From IMG/VR virus record IMGVR_UViG_3300020810_001156, positions 1 to 64,000 of that record: DNA of 64,000 nucleotides; one strand, 5' to 3'. Position 1 is the stretch's first letter. Each line of letters opens with the position of its first letter. The notes beneath the pieces were generated by a model. The model was not told where the DNA came from, ran no database searches, and was given only the letters and a program-made list of their open reading frames with translations. Position numbers and translations under genes: made by a program. Positions 9,658-32,920 of the stretch are shown here, in pieces.

Positions 9658-10728
9658 ATGAATTACGCACTAACTTACGATGATATTCAATTAGTACCAG
9701 CTTTTTCGAATATCAAATCAAGACAAAATATCAAACTTCATACGATGTTGAGTGAAAGATATGGATTATTAAATCCTATCGTAGCTTCACCAATGGATAC
9801 AGTTTGTGAGTTTGAAATGGCTTACAAAATGGCTGAATTGGGTGGAGTTGGGTGTATTCACCGATTTATGAGTATCAAAGAACAAAGAGATATCGTAGAG
9901 AGGTTGTATGAAGCAATCTATGCCGATGAATTTGGTATTGCTGAACAATGGGGTGTAATGTACGATGATTGGCATGGTGAAATCAAAGCCGTACCTATCA
10001 TGGCTGCTATTGGAGTTCAAAATGAAGATAAGGATAGAGCTTCGGCATTGGTTGAAGCTGGTGCAAATGTTTTACTGATTGATGTGGCTCATGGAGACCA
10101 CCAAAATGTGTTAGATATGATTCATTGGTGTGTAACTCAAGATGATTTTCAAAATGTAGATATCATAGCTGGAAATATTGCAACTGCAGAGGCAGCAGAG
10201 TTACTCCAAACTTATGGAGTACATGGTTTGAGAGTTGGAATTGGTGGAGGTTCACTTTGTACAACGAGAATTAAAACTGGGTTTGGTGTTCCAAATGTAA
10301 CTTCATTAGAGGATATCGCTAGGGTATCGAATGTACCTATTATGGCTGATGGTGGTTTGAGAACTTCTGGTGATATCTCAAAAGCACTAGCAGTTGGAGC
10401 TGATTGTGTAATGTTGGGTTCACTATTAGCTGGAACTGATGAAGCGCCTGGTCAAATTGTTGAAACTCCAAACGGATTGTACAAAAGATATAGAGGTTCA
10501 GCATCATTGGAAACTAAAGTAACTCACGGACAAGCTGCGAGAAATGTTGAAGGTGAAGCAACAACAATTCCATATAAAGGTGGAGTTAAATTTATTATCA
10601 ATGGATTATTGGATGGAGTGAAATCAGCCCTAAGTTATGCTGGGGCTAGTGATTTAAAAAATTATAATCCAAAATATGTAGTAGTTACCAATGCTGGACA
10701 GAATGAAGCTAAACCGCATCTTTTATGA
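9658..10728 (+). CDS. guaB: IMP dehydrogenase / GMP reductase family protein, no CBS domains
   Basis: ALTYDDIQLVP, ASPMDTV, IDVAHG, GNIAT, GIGGGSLCTTR (catalytic Cys), ADGG; IMPDH versus GMPR not resolved. Confidence 0.85.
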   Translation: MNYALTYDDIQLVPAFSNIKSRQNIKLHTMLSERYGLLNPIVASPMDTVCEFEMAYKMAELGGVGCIHRFMSIKEQRDIVERLYEAIYADEFGIAEQWGVMYDDWHGEIKAVPIMAAIGVQNEDKDRASALVEAGANVLLIDVAHGDHQNVLDMIHWCVTQDDFQNVDIIAGNIATAEAAELLQTYGVHGLRVGIGGGSLCTTRIKTGFGVPNVTSLEDIARVSNVPIMADGGLRTSGDISKALAVGADCVMLGSLLAGTDEAPGQIVETPNGLYKRYRGSASLETKVTHGQAARNVEGEATTIPYKGGVKFIINGLLDGVKSALSYAGASDLKNYNPKYVVVTNAGQNEAKPHLL

Positions 10729-19415: not shown

Positions 19416-19425
19416 TATATTTATA
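19416..19425 (+). promoter_or_regulatory. putative phage late promoter (TATATTTATA)
   Basis: Recurrent intergenic motif. Confidence 0.5.
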
Positions 19426-19448
19426 TACACAACTAAAGGAGTATAGAT

Positions 19449-19745: not shown

Positions 19746-20108
19746 ATGAACGAATATGTAGGAACTTTGATGCAGAGTAGAAACCAAACTCACATCTTTC
19801 ACTTACAAACAACATCTTACGCTAAGCATGTAGCGTTACAAGAATACTATGAAGGAATCATTGATTTGATTGATGGATTAGTAGAAGCATATCAAGGTAA
19901 GTACGAAATCATAACTGGGTATAAAATGATTGGTACATTAGAAGATATGAGTGATGAAGGAGATATCACAAACTATATTGAAAAGATAGCAAGATATTGT
20001 GAATTAAAAAGAGAGAAACTTCCACAAGATAATTTCTTAACTAACATCTATGATGATATAGATGTATTACTTCGTTCCACACATTACAAATTATCACAGT
20101 TATCTTAA
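19746..20108 (+). CDS. ferritin/Dps-like four-helix protein (DUF5856-like)
   Basis: HIFHLQT.SYAKH.AL.EYYE.I.DLIDGLVEAYQG motif. Confidence 0.75.
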   Translation: MNEYVGTLMQSRNQTHIFHLQTTSYAKHVALQEYYEGIIDLIDGLVEAYQGKYEIITGYKMIGTLEDMSDEGDITNYIEKIARYCELKREKLPQDNFLTNIYDDIDVLLRSTHYKLSQLS

Positions 20109-20125: not shown

Positions 20126-20163
20126 TAAAAAAAGGGGATGATTAATTTCATCCCCTTTCTTAT
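20126..20163. terminator. bidirectional intrinsic terminator
   Basis: AAAAAAGGGGATGA-TTAATT-TCATCCCCTTTCTT between convergent genes. Confidence 0.85.
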
Positions 20164-20179: not shown

Positions 20180-22900
20180 TTAGAATCTATAAGTTAAACT
20201 TGCGTTCCAAGTTCTACCAAATCCGAACCATACTGAGTTTCTAACATCAACACCATTCCATGTAGTTGAACTAGCATCTGCATGAATGTTAGAGTTAGAT
20301 TCTGCAATATAAACAGCATCGAATAAGTTGTTGATATTAGCTCTCGCAGTAAATTTACCAAACTTACCAGTCAATCCTAAATCAACTAAACCATACGATG
20401 GTAATTTCATCGCACCTAAGTTATCAGGTTGTGTAAACTCCGAATCAGTAATAGAGTAGTCAGCGTATAATCCATCTACAAATCTATAATCTACATCAAC
20501 ATTAAATCTTTTACCTAACTTCTGGTCTACTCCTAAAACAGCTACGAATTGTGCAGCATCACCAACTTTAGCATCTTTAAGGTAAAGAGTACCTGTTCCG
20601 ATTGATTGTTGGTTATCATCAAATAATTCTGCTTCGAAATCTTTAGTATATCTCCAATCACCGATTGATAACATACCTCTGAATCTCGTTGCGTTTGATA
20701 ATTGATACTTACCTTCAAATTCGATACCATTATGTACTACATCGATATCTCTGAATTGTGCAAATCCATCTACACCTTGTTGGTTAGATAAACTTCTACT
20801 AACAAATCTATTACCCCAAGTTGTTGTGTAAGCGTTAATGTTAAACGATACATCTGAACCAATAAAACCATAACCCAATTCAAATGAACGAATTTCTTCG
20901 TTTTGTAAATCTGGATTAATTTCATTAGCAAAGTTAGGGAATACTGCATCAAACTGAGGTTGTCTTGAAATTACACCTGCGTTAAAGAACACATTTGATT
21001 TCTCATCGATATTGTAGTTAGCACCACCCTTTACATATCCACCACCTTGGTTTTGAACATCTGATTCTGGGTTACCTGGTTGGTCAAAATAATCGATTCT
21101 TTGGAATGCTTGGTTAGATAAACCTGCTTGTACTACTGCAGTTAATTTATCTCCCTGATATTCTACTAAACCATTAAGACCTTGCCATCCAACTTTACCA
21201 ACATTGTAGTAATCAATCTTCGGACCGTTTAGACCTGTATTCTGAAAAGGATTTGCTTCAACTAAAGTATTGATGATTTGACCGTTAGAGTTTTTGTTAC
21301 CCGTTGAGTAATAACCATCTAATCCCATTAAATCATTAAGAACTCTATAATGATAACCAGTATAGCTTCTTAAATCAACACCAATAGATGTTTTGAATTT
21401 ACCAAATTGTCCTTCTAAGTTTGAGATACCACCAACCCAGTTGTGTGAGTTCATAGATGCTCTTCTTACCAATACTGTTCTATTTACATTAGAATCTCTG
21501 AATCCATTCGAACCAATAAGTTGTCCTTGGAATGCTGAGATATCACCTGTATATCCTTCAGTAGTTGATTGGTTAGCTGCAACGATTGCATCGAAATCGA
21601 TGAATCCATTTGCATCTCTTGAACCTCTACCATTTTCTAAGTAGTGTTCTGTAAGGTCTTTTCTGAAAGGTAAGATATCAGTTGCAGCTGCACGATAGTT
21701 GTTACCACGAGGACCTGTACCACCACCTCTACCAGCAGAACCATATAATGATGTTGCTAATTTAAGGTTATCTGAAATGTTCCAATCCCAGTTGAAAGTT
21801 GCTAATGGTTTGTTGTAGAAGTTTCTTCTTAAAGAATACTCTTCTCCATTTAGTGTACCACCATTAGAATTCCATCTCTGGTCAATTCCTTCTTCACCAA
21901 AGTTTTGGTAATCTCTAATAGATACCCAAACATCTCTTTGATGGTGCCATTGACCTGCACCTAAGAATGAAAAGTTCAATTCATGGTCTGAACCTTCCGG
22001 TGCGTAACCAACTGCAGCGAAGTAAGTCCATCCTTCACCTGAAGTGTTGTAAACATATCCGTTACCAGCCCACTTAGATAATAAGAAAGATGATGCCCAT
22101 CCTTTATCATTCTTACCTGTGTTGTAAGAAACTCCTGTTTTGGTGTATCCATCGTTACCAACCATTTGAATTACTTTACCACCTTCAGTTTTCTGTGCGG
22201 CTTTAGTAAAAATGGAAACAGTTCCCCCAACTGAAGGAACTGCCAACTTAGATGCACCTAAACCTCTTTGGATTTGGATACCTGATGCTACATCGGTTAA
22301 ACCTTGCCAGTTACTCCAATATACCCATCCGTTCTCCATATCGTTAACGGGTTGTCCGTTAATAAGGAAAGATGTATTTCTTTGGTCAAATCCTCTAAGA
22401 GAGATTCTTGAATCACCATAACCACCACCTTGTTTAGTAGCATAAACCCCTGGAGTTTTATTCATAATTTCAGGGAATTCTTGGTTACCAACCTTTAGAG
22501 AAATCTCAGCTGGTGATATCGATGATACCGCTACTGGAGTTTCTCTTACTTTTGCTACATCAATTACCCCTGATGTAACCACCACTTCAGCTAACTGATT
22601 TAATGCAGTTGGTAAATTTACAATCATATCGTTCACAGCAACAACCTCAGTTGTTTGGAAACCAATAAAAGAAATTACTAAAGTGTTACCAGCGGATGCC
22701 CCAGAAATAGAAAAGAGACCATCAAAATCGGTTGTTGTACCATTTTGGGTCCCTTTGATTACTACCGTTGCGCCTGGTAGGGGTTCATTCGTTTCTGCAT
22801 CTACCACTGTTCCAGTGATTTGTGCGAAACCGGTCATTGAGGTGAAAACCATCAATAACCCAATCAAAAATTGCTTCATAATTGCTTGATTTTTGTTCAT
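20180..22900 (-). CDS. TonB-dependent outer-membrane receptor
   Basis: Signal peptide (FAQ), CarboxypepD-like domain (ITGTVVD..EPLPGATV), plug (SLRGF...INGQP), barrel ending ...SLTYRF. Confidence 0.9.
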   Translation of the reverse strand: MNKNQAIMKQFLIGLLMVFTSMTGFAQITGTVVDAETNEPLPGATVVIKGTQNGTTTDFDGLFSISGASAGNTLVISFIGFQTTEVVAVNDMIVNLPTALNQLAEVVVTSGVIDVAKVRETPVAVSSISPAEISLKVGNQEFPEIMNKTPGVYATKQGGGYGDSRISLRGFDQRNTSFLINGQPVNDMENGWVYWSNWQGLTDVASGIQIQRGLGASKLAVPSVGGTVSIFTKAAQKTEGGKVIQMVGNDGYTKTGVSYNTGKNDKGWASSFLLSKWAGNGYVYNTSGEGWTYFAAVGYAPEGSDHELNFSFLGAGQWHHQRDVWVSIRDYQNFGEEGIDQRWNSNGGTLNGEEYSLRRNFYNKPLATFNWDWNISDNLKLATSLYGSAGRGGGTGPRGNNYRAAATDILPFRKDLTEHYLENGRGSRDANGFIDFDAIVAANQSTTEGYTGDISAFQGQLIGSNGFRDSNVNRTVLVRRASMNSHNWVGGISNLEGQFGKFKTSIGVDLRSYTGYHYRVLNDLMGLDGYYSTGNKNSNGQIINTLVEANPFQNTGLNGPKIDYYNVGKVGWQGLNGLVEYQGDKLTAVVQAGLSNQAFQRIDYFDQPGNPESDVQNQGGGYVKGGANYNIDEKSNVFFNAGVISRQPQFDAVFPNFANEINPDLQNEEIRSFELGYGFIGSDVSFNINAYTTTWGNRFVSRSLSNQQGVDGFAQFRDIDVVHNGIEFEGKYQLSNATRFRGMLSIGDWRYTKDFEAELFDDNQQSIGTGTLYLKDAKVGDAAQFVAVLGVDQKLGKRFNVDVDYRFVDGLYADYSITDSEFTQPDNLGAMKLPSYGLVDLGLTGKFGKFTARANINNLFDAVYIAESNSNIHADASSTTWNGVDVRNSVWFGFGRTWNASLTYRF

Positions 22901-23003
22901 AAATAATATAACTAATTAATATAACTTAACCCCATAAAGGGGTTTCTTTGAATATGTATAATGAACTTTGAAAAACAAAATTTCACTTGTACATATTTTG
23001 ATA

Positions 23004-23035
23004 CTAAGATACGAATAAATTTCTTAATATCCAAA
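23004..23035 (-). promoter_or_regulatory. Bacteroidota sigma-A-type promoter for the TBDR
   Basis: Reverse complement: TTTG-N20-TATCTTAG. Confidence 0.75.
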
Positions 23036-23075
23036 TAATATTTGGAAAATATTAAAAAAATGTTAATAAAAAATA

Positions 23076-23107
23076 TTTGTATATGTCAATTTTTTTTCGT
23101 ATATTAG
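23076..23107 (+). promoter_or_regulatory. Bacteroidota sigma-A-type promoter for the helicase
   Basis: TTTG 23076-23079, TATATTAG 23100-23107. Confidence 0.75.
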
Positions 23108-23149
23108 TAAAATTGTATATTTATGTATATACATATATAAGTATTACGA

Positions 23150-24529
23150 ATGTTAACATTACGAAATAATCAAATAGAACCTGTTAGAAAGGGTATTGAA
23201 TATTTTTCTGAAAATAAACCCGTTCCATCAATTATCGTAGCACCTACTGCTTTCGGTAAATCAATTGTTATTGCTCATATAGCAAAAGGTGTGGGAGAGA
23301 AGGTACTTGTTATTCAACCATCAAAAGAATTATTAGAACAAAACTATGAGAAGTTTACTAACTTAGGTGGTGAAGCAACTATCTATTCCGCTTCAATGGG
23401 TGAAAAAGAGATTGGTGATGTAACATATGCTACTATTGGTTCTATTGTTAATATAGCATATAAATTCAAAGAGTATGGAATATCTAAAGTAATCATCGAT
23501 GAGTGCGATAGGTTTCCCAGAGAACCAAATGGAATGTTAAGAAGATTCTTAAAGGGAGCTGGTATCATCCATACTTTAGGTCTAACTGCTACCCCTCTCA
23601 AACTTCAAACCAATATGGGTGAAGATGGTAAACCTTTCTCTAAGTTGGTTATGTTAACTAATCGTTCTAAGAAAGGTAACTTCTTTAAAAAGATTATTCA
23701 TGTTGCCCAAATTCAACAAATGGTTGAATCAAAGTTTTGGAGTAGATTAGAATATCAATCCTATGATTTCAATACTGGTGATTTGGTTTACAATACAACT
23801 GGTGCTGAGTATTCTAATTCATCTATAAAAAGAGCATATAAGAATCAAAAGATATCTTCTAAGATTGTAAAGAAGGTTGAAGAACTATACAATAGAAAAT
23901 CAATCTTAATAGCAGTTCCTTCAATCGATGAGGCTAAAGAATTAACTACAATGATTCCAAGTTGTAAAGCAGTTTACTCTGATATGCCAACTTCGGAAAG
24001 AAAAGAGATTATTGAAGATTTCAAAGCTGGTAGGTTAAGATGCATCGCTCAAGTTAATATCTTATCAGTTGGATTTGATTATCCAGAATTAGATTGTATC
24101 ATAACTGGTAGACCTACTGCTTCTTTGAGTTGGTGGTATCAATTTGTTGGTAGAGTTACTCGTATCCATCCAAACAAATCAGAAGGATTGGTTGTAGATT
24201 TCGTAGGAGCAGTTCCAAAGTTTGGAAAGGTTGAAGATATCTACTTCAAAGAAGATAAGGGAAGGTGGAGTATGTATGGTGAAGGAAAGAAACTACTAAC
24301 AGGTATCCCTATAAAAGAGATTGGTTTGCATATAGAAGGTGAACCATCACCATATGAAAAAGCCGCTGCATCACCATCAGTTAAGATGCCGTTTGGTAAA
24401 TATGCTGGTAGAGAGGTTAGAGAGATTCCTGCTCATTATAGAGAGTGGATGTTGACCAATTTTAATTGGACTCCATTTAACCAAAAGATTAAGGATGAAA
24501 TTCTAAGACTAAAATCTATTGGTATTTAA
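23150..24529 (+). CDS. SF2 DEAD/DEAH-like helicase (RadD/UvsW-like) with C-terminal DUF3820-like domain
   Basis: APTAFGKS, IIDECD, GLTATP, LSVGFD, QFVGRVTR; tail MPFGKY.G. Confidence 0.9.
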   Translation: MLTLRNNQIEPVRKGIEYFSENKPVPSIIVAPTAFGKSIVIAHIAKGVGEKVLVIQPSKELLEQNYEKFTNLGGEATIYSASMGEKEIGDVTYATIGSIVNIAYKFKEYGISKVIIDECDRFPREPNGMLRRFLKGAGIIHTLGLTATPLKLQTNMGEDGKPFSKLVMLTNRSKKGNFFKKIIHVAQIQQMVESKFWSRLEYQSYDFNTGDLVYNTTGAEYSNSSIKRAYKNQKISSKIVKKVEELYNRKSILIAVPSIDEAKELTTMIPSCKAVYSDMPTSERKEIIEDFKAGRLRCIAQVNILSVGFDYPELDCIITGRPTASLSWWYQFVGRVTRIHPNKSEGLVVDFVGAVPKFGKVEDIYFKEDKGRWSMYGEGKKLLTGIPIKEIGLHIEGEPSPYEKAAASPSVKMPFGKYAGREVREIPAHYREWMLTNFNWTPFNQKIKDEILRLKSIGI

Positions 24530-30341: not shown

Positions 30342-30890
30342 ATGAATAAAAAAATAGAAATTTCTGTATGGTTACTTTGTTTATTAGTAATCGGATTTTG
30401 GTTTATTGGATATACTACACAATACCAAAGACCAGCTAAAATAGAATATGTAGAAGTAGTAAAAGAAGTAGAAGTAGTTGTTACTGATACAATCTATGTA
30501 GATAAAATCATAGAAGAAAAAATATATGTACCAAAATACATTACACAAATCGAAAGAGATACAATTAAAGTAGAAGTACCAGTAGAAGTAATTGTTGAAA
30601 AACAAATACCAATTACTAAAAAAGTATATGTGGATAAAGTAGTAGATAGACTTGTTGAAGTTCCCGTCAACGAGAAAAAACTATTTTTAGGGTTTGGTTA
30701 TCAATACGATTTTGAAAATTATTTTAGTGGAGCAAATATAAAGTTAATTCACAAAACACCTAAAGATAAAATGTTTAGTTTAGATGTTGGTTTCAGAAAT
30801 GATTTGTTAGATAAAGAAACTAATGTAGGAAGATTAAGACCTTACATTGGAGGTTCTATATATTTTAGAATTGATAATCCAAACAAATAG
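30342..30890 (+). CDS. membrane-anchored protein with V/E/K-rich repeats and C-terminal beta strands
   Basis: TM helix; KVEVPVEVIVEK and VDRLVEVPV repeats. Confidence 0.75.
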   Translation: MNKKIEISVWLLCLLVIGFWFIGYTTQYQRPAKIEYVEVVKEVEVVVTDTIYVDKIIEEKIYVPKYITQIERDTIKVEVPVEVIVEKQIPITKKVYVDKVVDRLVEVPVNEKKLFLGFGYQYDFENYFSGANIKLIHKTPKDKMFSLDVGFRNDLLDKETNVGRLRPYIGGSIYFRIDNPNK

Positions 30891-32920
30891 TGAAAAAACT
30901 TCTTTACATATTATTATTTTTACCCACTTTAGTTTTTGGACAAAGTGGTGAAGGATATGTAAATTACAAATCCTATAAAACTCACTATGGGAATGGTTAT
31001 AGTTCAACCTATAATGGATACACATATAGTGGATTAGCTGATAACGCAACCGAGTTACAAGCAATGTTAGATGTAAATCACCCTGGTACATCTTTAACAC
31101 ATGAAGGTGAAGCAGTAGCTAATTCAAGTGAAGGATTAAAAGGAGGTAGACCTTCCAGATGGGGGAATGATTTTTATGCCGTTTATCACTATGGTTGGTT
31201 TCAACCACAAGAAACAGGAACTTACAGATTTACCCTACAATCAGATGATGGTAGTGGTTTATGGATAGATGGAGACTTAAAACTATTTAGACCTTGTTGT
31301 GGTGCATCCTCTGTGGATGTTTCCTTAACATCAGGACAATGGTACTTCTTTGAAACAAAATGGCAAGAATATACAGGTGGTGATTATATGTACTTTATGT
31401 ACTCACCTCCAAGTAATGCTAATGTGTTTTATGTTGGTGACCAAACACAGTATCTTAAAGTAACTAATATAGAACCAGAAGAAGAACCAATAAGTCCTGA
31501 AGTAGATTTAGATTTAGAATTCCATTCTCAATTAGCACCAGAAGAATATAGATTCAGAGTTTACTATGATGGAACTTCTGCACAAGATGGAACTGAATGG
31601 TTGAATACATCTACAATGAACTCTTCTTATTATTTAGATGATGATGGTAGTAAGGATATTACTGATTATCTAAATTTAGTCAAAATGGCAGATGGTAAGA
31701 AGGCAACTACAACTGGTGGTTGGACGGAGTGGTGTGTGGTTTATGATTATGATACAACTAACAAACGATACAGGGTTGGTATTGATAAAAGAGAATTTCC
31801 AAGTGGATTTACTTTTACTGATTTGAAACAATTAAAGTTGTTTGATTTATGGGATGGTGAAATAACTTATATGTCAGATGATATCTATTGGGCAAATTAT
31901 TACATCTATACTGATACTCAATTTGATTTCACAAGTTCAACCTTTTCATCTTATATAAGAGATGCAAATGGATTCTATGGAATAAAAGCAGATTTCTCAT
32001 TTGAAGATGTTGAAATATACAAAGGACATAAAGTATCATTTATGAATCCATCTACCAATATAGAAGGATGGACAGCAGAAGAATTTATGGATGATTATAT
32101 TACAGTTGCAGATGTAGTTGCAGGATTTAACGAATTAGCTGGTGGTGGAATTAATGGTGGATTAAAAGGAGATTTGAATGGAGTCCAATTACAAAACTCA
32201 GATGTTAACCAAGATGGTGAATTTGATTTTCAAGATAGTCAAATAGGATTATCTTTTTTGACTGGTGGTGATACTCCGTTTGATGGAAGTTTATATGATA
32301 TAATGAGAATAGTTCCTAAATCAGAATATGATAATACTACAACTACTAATTGGAAAACACAAACAAATAAATCACCATCAACATCGTTTACGTTTAGTCT
32401 TATAGATACGATACAAACTTTAGAGTATAAGGTTTCTTTTATAGGTGATGTAAACCTTTCACATTCTGCTCCCCAAACAGGTACTTCACCCGCTACCCAA
32501 TCTACTATATCTTCAAGAATGATGAGTGTAAGAAATTCATCTACTCAAAACAATACTTCGTTAGAGGTTGATTTAGATATTGAAAAAACTGAAGAACATA
32601 TAATCATTACATTAGATTTGCCTGAGAATAATTTTAATCTAATTGGTTCTGAATTTAGAATTGGGTTTGATAATGAACGAGTAGAATATGATAAGTTAGA
32701 AACTAATACAATGATGAATAGCTTTGATGCTAAGAGGAGTTCTTATGTTAAGGTGGGTTCTATATCAACTGATGGTTCTCTAACCTTAAACAGCGGCGTT
32801 CAATATAAAATTTATTTTAAACCAATACAATCATTTGAATCAACATTAGGATTGGTATCGGTTAAGAAATCAGAAGTTGTTGATGTAAATGCTAATATAA
32901 TAAATGTAATTATAAAATGA
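30890..32920 (+). CDS. exported PA14-domain protein with dockerin- and cohesin-like domains
   Basis: Signal peptide (FGQ); GWFQPQETGTYRFTLQSDDGS.LWIDG (PA14); DVNQDGEFDFQD; GDVNLSH; C-terminal cohesin-like domain. Confidence 0.75.
   Translation: MKKLLYILLFLPTLVFGQSGEGYVNYKSYKTHYGNGYSSTYNGYTYSGLADNATELQAMLDVNHPGTSLTHEGEAVANSSEGLKGGRPSRWGNDFYAVYHYGWFQPQETGTYRFTLQSDDGSGLWIDGDLKLFRPCCGASSVDVSLTSGQWYFFETKWQEYTGGDYMYFMYSPPSNANVFYVGDQTQYLKVTNIEPEEEPISPEVDLDLEFHSQLAPEEYRFRVYYDGTSAQDGTEWLNTSTMNSSYYLDDDGSKDITDYLNLVKMADGKKATTTGGWTEWCVVYDYDTTNKRYRVGIDKREFPSGFTFTDLKQLKLFDLWDGEITYMSDDIYWANYYIYTDTQFDFTSSTFSSYIRDANGFYGIKADFSFEDVEIYKGHKVSFMNPSTNIEGWTAEEFMDDYITVADVVAGFNELAGGGINGGLKGDLNGVQLQNSDVNQDGEFDFQDSQIGLSFLTGGDTPFDGSLYDIMRIVPKSEYDNTTTTNWKTQTNKSPSTSFTFSLIDTIQTLEYKVSFIGDVNLSHSAPQTGTSPATQSTISSRMMSVRNSSTQNNTSLEVDLDIEKTEEHIIITLDLPENNFNLIGSEFRIGFDNERVEYDKLETNTMMNSFDAKRSSYVKVGSISTDGSLTLNSGVQYKIYFKPIQSFESTLGLVSVKKSEVVDVNANIINVIIK

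What the first reader, a model, noticed from the sequence alone, without database searches (positions are those of the whole stretch)
20180..22900. Full-length TonB-dependent receptor carried by a lytic phage
Seen: an intact 906-aa TBDR, the only long minus-strand gene, with its own host-type promoter and terminator (moron-like). Established: TBDRs import nutrients and are frequent phage receptors. Inference: a nutrient-uptake AMG, or a receptor decoy/replacement for superinfection exclusion.
Basis: partly seen in the sequence, partly recalled or inferred. Interest (0 to 1): 0.6.

Follow-up and report, generated by a model that had tools for sequence, protein, structure and literature searches.

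The report
Jumbo phage carries host nutrient-import gate
A 252-kb T4-like phage of marine flavobacteria carries an intact copy of its hosts' single-copy core outer-membrane importer; hundreds of related phages keep the gene under the same evolutionary constraints as the bacterial gene, so it most likely works as a real transporter during infection.

Summary
ORF 20180-22900(-) is an intact TonB-dependent transporter with a signal peptide, CarboxypepD_reg domain, TonB box, plug, 22-strand-type barrel and C-terminal beta-signal. It is the only long minus-strand gene in the whole 252.6-kb T4-like jumbo phage, not just in the window. It is not a chimera: an independent assembly is identical over 15 flanking genes, and relatives with 87-92% identical copies share the same inverted arrangement. 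At least 76 related viral contigs carry the gene, mostly co-directional inside the replication/nucleotide module. Ten long relatives lack it, so it is accessory. It descends from a single-copy flavobacterial TBDR at a conserved DUF3108-M23-pgi-TBDR locus. Phage copies are under purifying selection (omega 0.04-0.21), and their per-site variability matches that of cellular copies (rho 0.83; the plug is equally conserved). One phage clade is rejected (AU p=0.015), so there were at least two phage-cell transfers. The same allele class has also replaced the resident gene in situ in several bacterial genera. Best reading: a functional, host-TonB-powered uptake gene (AMG) with unknown substrate. Receptor remodelling is the main rival. 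The terminator is supported; the 'host-type promoter' is not. Phage TBDRs were surveyed in an October 2026 preprint, so this is a new member of a known kind.

The parts
20180..22900 (-). TonB-dependent transporter gene (906 aa from the first ATG; probable true start at 22879, 899 aa)
22820..22879 (-). Sec signal peptide (aa 8-27, MKQFLIGLLMVFTSMTGFA|Q), with Gln at +1 as is typical of Bacteroidota signal-peptidase-I substrates (the Q-rule is cited from memory)
   Evidence: an N-terminal hydrophobic segment ending in A-Q is present in all phage and cellular copies
22577..22819 (-). N-terminal CarboxypepD_reg-like domain (aa 28-108). It is absent from the ~835-aa short forms found in some phages and cells.
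22571..22594 (-). TonB-box-like segment LAEVVVTS (aa 103-110)
   Evidence: LxEVVV(T/S)S is conserved in phage and cellular copies. L103 and E105 are nearly invariant.
22235..22549 (-). Plug domain (aa 118-222), the most conserved part of the protein
   Evidence: mean column entropy 0.23 in phages, 0.24 in cells
20183..22183 (-). Beta-barrel (aa 240-906), ending in the beta-signal ...SLTYRF
   Evidence: pLDDT about 80-90; FhuA, Fiu, OprC, FecA at E 1e-28 to 1e-24
20128..20161 (.). Bidirectional intrinsic terminator shared by the convergent TBDR and DUF5856 genes
   Evidence: (hairpin and T-run kept in 87% and 92% relatives with a different stem sequence)
22901..23149 (.). AT-rich divergent intergenic region between the TBDR and the helicase gene; the TBDR promoter should lie here but was not identified
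23027..23040 (-). Conserved block TATTATTTGGATAT, the best candidate for a Bacteroidota-like -7 element (one base longer than TAnnTTTG)
   Evidence: conserved in three relatives; no exact match. This is inference only.
22928..22944 (-). Small GC hairpin AACCCCTTTATGGGGTT in the 5' leader. It is unique in the window and deleted in the 92% relative, so it is dispensable.
19746..20108 (+). Convergent neighbour, a DUF5856 protein from a virus-restricted family of unknown function
23150..24529 (+). Divergent neighbour, a DEAD/ResIII-type phage helicase
9658..10728 (+). GMP-reductase/IMPDH-fold gene. Its homologue lies directly upstream of the TBDR, on the same strand, in 17 related phage contigs.

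Best explanation
The gene is a functional TonB-dependent outer-membrane transporter that a lineage of T4-like jumbo phages of marine Flavobacteriales captured from its hosts. The source was the hosts' single-copy core TBDR, which sits next to pgi. Inferred mechanism: during the lytic cycle the phage gene is transcribed. The precursor is exported by host Sec via its signal peptide and inserted into the outer membrane by host BAM via its C-terminal beta-signal. It is then energised by the host TonB-ExbBD complex through its TonB box, because the phage encodes no Ton components. There it imports the same, still unidentified, substrate as the host orthologue, keeping up or raising uptake capacity while the phage replicates. 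That makes it an auxiliary metabolic (uptake) gene. Shown here: gene integrity, phage context, origin, conserved motifs, purifying selection, and constraints identical to the cellular copies. Inferred: expression, membrane insertion, TonB coupling, the substrate and the fitness benefit.
For: Family and fold. True phage context and no chimera: L003 is 100% identical over 15 flanking genes; the same inverted layout in a 267-kb contig, a 98-kb contig and others from different metagenomes. Widespread in the phage group: 426 IMG/VR hits; 76 of the 80 fetched loci have flanks matching G000 proteins. Origin: cellular orthologues lie in a conserved DUF3108-M23-pgi-TBDR synteny and are single-copy. The basal branches of the clade holding the phage copies are cellular. 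Function retained: omega is 0.035-0.21 in 18 phage pairs against 0.018-0.116 in 8 pairs from bacterial-genome loci, 6 of them with verified pgi-linked context. The signal peptide, the TonB box and the terminal Phe are kept in all phage copies. Per-site entropy in phages and cells correlates at Spearman 0.83, with plug 0.23/0.24, strands 0.72/0.69 and loops 0.72/0.71, and no site is fixed differently. Host Ton system needed: no TonB_C or ExbB in G000. Metabolic setting: in relatives the gene lies co-directionally among GMP reductase, RNR, thioredoxin, NAD synthase, PolB and clamp-loader genes. Composition matches the phage genome (GC3 z = 0.7).
Against: The substrate is unknown: no curated equivalog matches, and the fold matches are generic at 12-15% identity. 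The gene is accessory: ten long relatives lack it (though these records are only 39-84% complete). It is unclear how much extra uptake new transporter copies can give within one lytic cycle. Conservation identical to the host copy is also what one would expect if the protein only had to be a faithful, working stand-in for a host receptor. The plug is poorly modelled (pLDDT 26-50) despite its sequence conservation.
Confidence: 0.55

Rival explanations
1. Receptor remodelling or superinfection exclusion. The host's pgi-linked TBDR is a phage receptor, for these or competing phages. The phage-made copy changes the receptor landscape of the infected cell by occupying BAM or membrane space, masking receptors, or supplying a non-adsorbing but working allele. 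This would reduce secondary adsorption or the loss of progeny on cell debris.
For: TBDRs are classic phage receptors; the best fold matches are FhuA, including its complexes with the T5 receptor-binding protein and the Llp exclusion protein. The preprint 10.64898/2026.10.24.761521 proposes this role for huge-phage OMPs. The cellular locus shows allele replacement that disagrees with the species tree, a pattern often seen at phage-receptor loci. Omega is somewhat higher in phage copies than in cellular copies.
Against: The long loops are no more variable than the barrel strands, in phages and in cells alike, and no phage-specific substitutions exist, so there is no arms-race signature. The TonB box and plug are fully conserved, which a decoy does not need. 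Adding new protein does not remove receptors already in the membrane (established knowledge of OMP stability). No receptor-binding data exist.
Confidence: 0.2
2. Gene-shuttle or receptor-seeding role. The phages act mainly as vehicles that move this transporter allele between marine Bacteroidota lineages. Alternatively, they release receptor-laden membrane debris that makes neighbouring cells adsorb phage. On either view the gene's persistence reflects transfer dynamics, not uptake during infection.
For: A single phage clade is rejected (AU p = 0.015). The phage-type allele occupies the pgi slot in Polaribacter, Robiginitalea and Yeosuana, against the flank tree (AU p = 0.012, delta lnL 435), and it is the only copy in the two of these genomes that were searched, Polaribacter and Robiginitalea. 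The gene occupies at least six different positions in phage genomes.
Against: The direction of transfer is unresolved; the basal branches are cellular, so repeated cell-to-phage capture explains most of the interleaving. A strictly lytic T4-like phage is a poor donor to surviving cells. Long-term purifying selection within phage-only clades implies a benefit to the phage itself.
Confidence: 0.1
3. Neutral passenger or assembly/binning artefact: a host fragment joined to phage DNA, or a recently captured gene of no use to the phage.
For: TBDR genes are very abundant in Bacteroidota metagenomes. The gene is the only long one on the opposite strand. Some 'MAG' contigs with this gene are mis-binned (L104 is identical to phage L075), which shows that binning errors occur around it.
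Against: Assemblies from several metagenomes give the identical or a conserved arrangement. The nearest cellular copy is only about 76% identical. The reading frame is intact in about 150 copies. Omega is well below 1. GC3 matches the phage genome.
Confidence: 0.02

Closest known systems
Huge-phage beta-barrel outer-membrane proteins, including the 22-stranded TonB-dependent receptor of Lak phages (bioRxiv 10.64898/2026.10.24.761521, Oct 2026)
   Same: A full-length TBDR encoded by a phage of more than 200 kb that infects Bacteroidota. The gene is host-derived, and some neighbourhoods include transport or cofactor genes. The preprint reports transcription for the Lak example.
   Different: That work is a survey centred on gut phages of Prevotella, and its text never mentions Flavobacteria. 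The case here is a T4-like group of apparently marine phages. The gene is orthologous to a single-copy, pgi-linked core TBDR, sits in the replication module, shows measured purifying selection and constraints identical to cellular copies, and shows repeated phage-cell exchange. None of these points is described there, as far as the text I could read shows.
Cyanophage nutrient-uptake AMGs such as the phosphate-binding protein PstS and porin-like OMPs (own knowledge; the cyanophage OMP-like family IPR056410/DUF680 is mentioned)
   Same: Lytic marine T4-like phages that carry host-derived envelope or periplasmic uptake components, thought to relieve nutrient limitation during infection.
   Different: Those are a periplasmic binding protein or small passive barrels. 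This is an energised 22-strand-type transporter that depends on the host TonB-ExbBD complex, and its substrate is unknown.
FhuA/BtuB-type TonB-dependent transporters of E. coli
   Same: Plug-in-barrel fold (Foldseek E 2.5e-28 to FhuA), a TonB box and a C-terminal aromatic beta-signal. These proteins also serve as phage receptors.
   Different: Only 12-15% identity. This protein has an N-terminal CarboxypepD_reg domain typical of Bacteroidota. The BtuB equivalog model scores 41 bits against a 599.7-bit cut-off, so the 'cobalamin receptor' and 'Fe transport' names in JGI records are generic labels.
SusC/RagA family of Bacteroidota
   Same: The N-terminal CarboxypepD_reg domain, TonB box and start of the plug resemble SusC (TIGR04056 aligns to aa 27-184).
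   Different: The whole-protein score is 96 bits against a cut-off of 368. No SusD-like partner lies next to the gene in the two cellular loci with Pfam-annotated neighbours, and none was found among the phage neighbours that were annotated. It is therefore not a SusC-type glycan importer.
Phage lambda Lom and other phage morons
   Same: A phage-encoded outer-membrane beta-barrel which, in this subclade, forms a self-contained unit on the opposite strand with its own terminator.
   Different: Lom is an 8-stranded barrel expressed from a prophage. This phage has no integrase, the barrel is a 22-strand-type transporter, and in most relatives the gene is not a separate unit.

Membership tests
TonB-dependent transporter (TBDT/TBDR) | N-terminal plug domain (PF07715) | tested here: met
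   47.9 bits against a cut-off of 23.9, aa 118-222; dozens of invariant plug residues across 48 homologues
TonB-dependent transporter (TBDT/TBDR) | C-terminal 22-stranded beta-barrel (PF00593) enclosing the plug | tested here: met
   (55.4 bits against 27), barrel pLDDT about 80-90, FhuA/Fiu/OprC/FecA at E 1e-28 to 1e-24 and TM up to 0.76 by target length.
TonB-dependent transporter (TBDT/TBDR) | TonB box upstream of the plug | tested here: met
   LAEVVVTS at aa 103-110, conserved as LxEVVV(T/S)S in phage and cellular copies. Binding to TonB itself was not testable.
TonB-dependent transporter (TBDT/TBDR) | Sec signal peptide and C-terminal aromatic beta-signal for BAM | tested here: met
   a hydrophobic N-terminus ending in A|Q; a C-terminus L-(K/R/T)-Y-x-F with terminal Phe nearly invariant
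TonB-dependent transporter (TBDT/TBDR) | Energised by a TonB-ExbB-ExbD complex | not testable with these tools
   The phage has no TonB_C or ExbB (ExbD was not searched), so it would depend on the host. This needs experiment.
SusC/RagA subfamily | Whole-protein match to TIGR04056 and an adjacent SusD-like lipoprotein | tested here: not met
   96 bits against a cut-off of 368, N-terminus only; no SusD-like neighbour among the annotated genes
BtuB cobalamin receptor / siderophore receptors | Match to curated equivalog models | tested here: not met
   TIGR01779 41 bits against 599.7; MxcH 16.9 against 925
Auxiliary metabolic gene (AMG) of a phage | Host-derived gene inside a true phage genome, flanked by phage genes on both sides | tested here: met
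Auxiliary metabolic gene (AMG) of a phage | Maintained by selection in the phage lineage | tested here: met
   (omega 0.035-0.21); a phage-only clade of 30 sampled rows
Auxiliary metabolic gene (AMG) of a phage | Expressed during infection and changes host metabolism or uptake | not testable with these tools
Moron (autonomous accessory transcription unit) | Own promoter and own terminator, inserted between two phage genes | tested here: inconclusive
   The terminator is met. The promoter was not identified. The layout is autonomous only in this subclade.

The most novel reading that the evidence does not exclude
The TBDR may be more than a uptake AMG. It may be a gene that circulates between T4-like jumbo phages and distantly related marine Bacteroidota. 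The phage-borne allele class repeatedly overwrites the resident single-copy transporter at the pgi locus, as seen in Polaribacter, Robiginitalea and Yeosuana. On this view the phages act as reservoir and vector for a core outer-membrane protein that may also be their own receptor, so that a lytic phage shapes, or even seeds, the receptor landscape of its host community.
Probability: 0.12. Interest if true: 0.8.

Novelty: new member of a known kind. Interest (0 to 1): 0.55.

Why it matters
TonB-dependent transporters are the main way marine Flavobacteriia take up substrates. A large, apparently abundant group of lytic jumbo phages keeps a working copy of one specific, otherwise single-copy core transporter. 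That points to a nutrient that limits phage production in the sea, and it singles out a conserved flavobacterial transporter of unknown substrate as worth characterising. The matched phage and cellular copies also give a natural test of whether a phage OMP acts as importer or as receptor modifier, a question the recent huge-phage survey left open. The discordant allele replacement at the bacterial locus suggests that phage-linked gene flow reaches even core envelope genes.

Tried and rejected
2. GenBank phage records: there was no DNA match. By protein, the only hits were 35% or less identical, in unannotated gut 'Bacteriophage sp.' contigs and two uncultured huge phages, so no cultured phage with this gene was found.
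3. Substrate inference led nowhere. NCBIfam has no equivalog. The PDB sequence search matches only the N-terminal domains. Foldseek gives generic TBDTs.
4. The neighbour DUF5856, labelled 'starvation-inducible regulator' in PHROGs, was checked as a possible Dps/ferritin clue. No support was found, and the lead was dropped.
5. An iron link via the adjacent RNR in relatives was considered and not pursued, since nothing found here supports it.
6. Transposon-like mobility: no flanking direct or inverted repeats.
7. E. coli-type and Bacteroidota-type promoter scans: not significant, or no exact match.
8. Extracellular versus periplasmic loop assignment: model coordinates were not exposed, so I compared only 'long loops' with strands.
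9. The costly representative-protein search, complex prediction and the second structure job were not used. The family was already clear and no binding claim is made.
Full report
OBSERVATION

The ORF is real and lies exactly where stated: 20180..22900, minus strand, 906 aa. Pfam finds three domains above the curated cut-offs: CarbopepD_reg_2 (aa 28-108), Plug (118-222) and the TonB-dependent receptor barrel (382-859). M8 is nearly invariant among homologues, so translation probably starts at 22879. The mature protein would then follow a 20-residue signal peptide ending ...GFA|Q.

An AlphaFold2 model built on a 48-sequence alignment gives a confident barrel (pLDDT about 80-90 over aa 240-906; mean 76, pTM 0.72). 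The plug is poorly modelled. Foldseek matches classical TonB-dependent transporters (FhuA, Fiu, OprC, FecA) at E 1e-28 to 1e-24 but only 12-15% identity. The family is therefore certain and the substrate is not. The protein is not a SusC (96 bits against a 368-bit cut-off) and not a BtuB (41 against 599.7). The 'cobalamin receptor' and 'Fe transport' names in JGI records are generic.

THE PHAGE

The window is the first 64 kb of a 252,603-bp IMG/VR virus record that CheckV rates 100% complete. The genome encodes:
- a T4-type major capsid protein (Gp23, E 1.6e-76);
- a baseplate wedge protein and a helicase;
- DnaB, class I RNR, family-B DNA polymerase, clamp loader, GroEL and GroES.

It has no tyrosine or serine recombinase and no tRNAs. 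This is a T4-like jumbo myovirus. 'Lytic' is the natural reading but rests on absence of evidence.

Of 222 non-overlapping ORFs of at least 80 aa, 218 are on the + strand.

NOT A CHIMERA

L003, a 107-kb contig from another metagenome, is 100% identical across the TBDR and 15 flanking genes. Copies that are 92% and 87% identical lie on a 267-kb contig, a 98-kb contig and eight shorter contigs from other samples. The three whose context was read (the 267-kb, the 98-kb and an 18.7-kb contig) have exactly the same layout: helicase on one side, TBDR inverted, DUF5856 gene on the other. The nearest cellular copy is only about 76% identical, and the gene's GC3 matches the phage genome (z = 0.7).

REGULATORY SIGNALS

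The terminator claim holds. A 14-bp hairpin plus T-run lies at 20128-20161 between the convergent genes. The 87% and 92% relatives keep a hairpin and T-run at the same place with a completely different stem sequence, which is good evidence that it functions.

The promoter claim does not hold as stated. Sigma-70-like matches are fewer than in shuffled sequence (12 against 17). There is no exact Bacteroidota -7 box (TAnnTTTG, a consensus I cite from memory) upstream. A conserved TTATTTGG-containing block at 23027-23040 is the best candidate. A small 5'-leader hairpin (22928-22944) is deleted in one relative and so is dispensable.

HOW WIDESPREAD THE GENE IS

A scan of IMG/VR gave 426 relatives. 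Of the 80 loci fetched, 76 have at least two flanking ORFs with homologues in G000, so they are relatives of this phage and not bacterial contamination.

In almost all of them the TBDR is co-directional with its neighbours and sits in the replication/nucleotide module. The gene directly upstream is most often:
- a GMP-reductase-fold gene (17 loci);
- a non-specific endonuclease (7);
- clamp-loader subunit A (6);
- thioredoxin next to RNR (6);
- GroES (6).

The gene directly downstream is often an AAA_28 (NadR-kinase-like) family member (24 loci). GT2, NAD synthase or radical-SAM genes also occur there.

The window's isolated, inverted layout is therefore a derived feature of one subclade. Ten long relatives identified by PolB (45-79% identity; 39-84% complete) have no TBDR anywhere in the record, while the same search finds the gene in G000. 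The gene is accessory and patchy, and it occupies at least six different positions. No flanking repeats explain this mobility.

ORIGIN

The closest cellular homologues are in marine Bacteroidota MAGs. In a complete Polaribacter chromosome and in a 185-kb Flavobacteriaceae contig the gene lies in the order DUF3108 - M23 peptidase - pgi - TBDR, among housekeeping genes.

This synteny holds in 25 of the 80 genome loci. These include the distant (42-45%) orthologues of Tenacibaculum, Maribacter, Flagellimonas and Flavobacterium. Each of five genomes checked has just one such gene. The phage gene thus descends from an old, single-copy core flavobacterial transporter that is not part of a polysaccharide-utilisation locus.

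PHYLOGENY

I built an IQ-TREE tree of 54 rows whose context I had verified.
- All phage copies and one class of cellular copies form a clade with 100% support, and its basal branches are cellular.
- The window's gene lies in a phage-only clade of 30 rows (SH-aLRT 90).
- A second clade (99%) mixes 6 cellular and 5 phage rows.
- Forcing all phage copies into one clade is rejected (delta lnL 83, AU p = 0.015).

There were therefore at least two phage-cell transfers. Their direction is not resolved. Some 'MAG' rows are mis-binned phage contigs: L104 is identical to L075.

A SECOND, UNEXPECTED RESULT

Among cellular loci, the tree of the syntenic neighbours (PGI + M23 + DUF3108) follows taxonomy. 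Polaribacter pairs with Tenacibaculum (100%), and Robiginitalea groups with Flagellimonas and Maribacter. The TBDRs of these pairs nevertheless belong to two deeply split allele classes (48-51% identity against 67-73% within a class).

Forcing the holders of the 'phage-type' allele into one clade on the neighbour tree costs 435 lnL units (AU p = 0.012). Because the gene is single-copy, the allele class that the phages carry has replaced the resident gene in situ several times. Whether phages are the vector is inference.

IS IT FUNCTIONAL, AND AS WHAT?

- Nei-Gojobori omega is 0.035-0.21 for 18 phage-phage pairs. It is 0.018-0.116 for 8 pairs from bacterial-genome loci, 6 of them with verified pgi-linked cellular context.
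- Every phage copy keeps the signal peptide, the TonB-box-like LxEVVV(T/S)S segment and the C-terminal ...Y-x-F.
- Column entropies in 72 phage copies and 14 cellular copies correlate at Spearman 0.83. Region by region they are equal: plug 0.23/0.24, strands 0.72/0.69, long loops 0.72/0.71. No site is fixed differently between the two groups.
- The phage has no TonB or ExbB.

Together these results say that the phage protein is selected to do what the cellular protein does: TonB-dependent import using host machinery. A decoy would not need a TonB box or an invariant plug. An arms-race receptor would be expected to show fast-evolving loops, and these loops do not evolve fast.

I therefore favour the uptake-AMG reading at about 0.55. 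Receptor remodelling or superinfection exclusion, the role suggested for huge-phage OMPs in the recent preprint, comes second at about 0.2. A shuttle or receptor-seeding role stands at about 0.1. Artefact or passenger stands at about 0.02.

The substrate remains unknown. The neighbourhood in relatives (purine, deoxynucleotide and NAD metabolism) is suggestive but proves nothing.

WHAT IS KNOWN

The only relevant paper in the searchable library is bioRxiv 10.64898/2026.10.24.761521 (24 Oct 2026). It reports 1,603 beta-barrel OMPs in 1,303 huge phages, 296 of them from marine samples, and a transcribed 22-stranded TonB-dependent receptor in Lak phages of Prevotella. It discusses superinfection exclusion. 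Its text does not mention Flavobacteria.

Other searches found nothing on phage-encoded TBDRs in marine or flavobacterial jumbo phages. PHROGs already holds an unannotated family that matches the barrel (phrog_5687). The kind is therefore known, and this is a new, well-populated member.

The features I did not find described are:
- orthology to a single-copy core gene;
- constraints identical to the cellular copy;
- placement in the replication module;
- recurrent exchange between phages and cells;
- in-situ allele replacement in hosts.

LIMITS

- There are no expression data and no host isolate, and the substrate is unknown.
- The trees were made with the quick search and the LG+G4 model.
- The AU tests used groups defined by context before the constrained searches, but the allele classes were recognised on a first tree.
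- The virus records used to show absence of the gene are incomplete.
- The marine origin is inferred from the names of the MAG taxa.

Noticed in passing
G000 whole genome (window = 1-64000): Extreme strand bias: 218 of 222 non-overlapping ORFs of at least 80 aa are on the + strand. There are no tRNA genes in this 252.6-kb jumbo phage. Most structural ORFs in the window have no PHROG match.
   Followed up: partly
cellular loci L083, L086/L114, L093 against L126, L121/L130, L122: The single-copy pgi-linked TBDR of Flavobacteriaceae exists in two deeply split allele classes, and their distribution contradicts the tree of the syntenic neighbours (AU p = 0.012). This indicates in-situ replacement of a core outer-membrane gene.
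   Followed up: yes
G000 176874-179873 (L164:2475-5474): The phage RNR small subunit carries an N-terminal ATP-cone and the large subunit is short at 568 aa. I recall this arrangement from Flavobacteriia class I RNRs; that is from memory and was not tested.
   Followed up: no
G000 188411-189628 (L164:14012-15229): A protein with a Druantia DruA domain (E 6.3e-22) is conserved at 65-86% identity in the replication module of related phages. It is a homologue of a defence-system protein carried by a phage.
   Followed up: no
G000 244881-246800 (L165): The phage encodes a GroES + GroEL pair. GroES lies directly upstream of the TBDR in six relatives.
   Followed up: no
window 9658-10728 (+): A gene with the GMP-reductase/IMPDH fold (PF00478, E 5.8e-97, no CBS insert seen), a purine-salvage AMG. 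Its homologue is the commonest upstream neighbour of the TBDR in relatives.
   Followed up: partly
relatives, e.g. L005:6065-6358, L033:10764-12207, L018:14019-15101: Downstream of the TBDR many relatives carry an AAA_28 (NadR-kinase-like) family member, often in two copies, as well as NAD synthase, a GT2 glycosyltransferase and a radical-SAM protein. The AAA_28 family has no homologue in G000 at E 1e-8.
   Followed up: partly
window 30890-32920 (+): A 676-aa protein with a PA14/GLEYA carbohydrate-binding domain (also seen in L227). It may be an adhesin or a receptor-binding protein.
   Followed up: no
window 19416-19444 and 23116-23144: The AT-rich motif TATATTTAT(A/G)TATA recurs just upstream of + strand genes, and the second copy is conserved in a relative. 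It is a candidate phage promoter element.
   Followed up: no
L104 (Crocinitomicaceae MAG), L088 and L091 (Ca. Arcticimaribacter MAGs): These contigs are deposited in bacterial MAGs but are, or probably are, jumbo-phage contigs. L104 is identical to IMG/VR locus L075, flanks included. L088 and L091 share a phage gene just downstream of the TBDR.
   Followed up: partly
IMG/VR records behind L206, L207 and L221 (G005-G007): These PolB relatives (53% identity; 130-170 kb) are classed as 'provirus' by IMG/VR. That is odd for T4-like phages and was not examined.
   Followed up: no
phage and cellular TBDR copies, e.g. L064, L076, L085, L113: Both phages and cells hold a long form (about 900 aa, with the CarboxypepD_reg domain) and a short form (about 835 aa, signal peptide followed directly by the TonB box). 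The N-terminal domain has been lost or gained repeatedly.
   Followed up: partly
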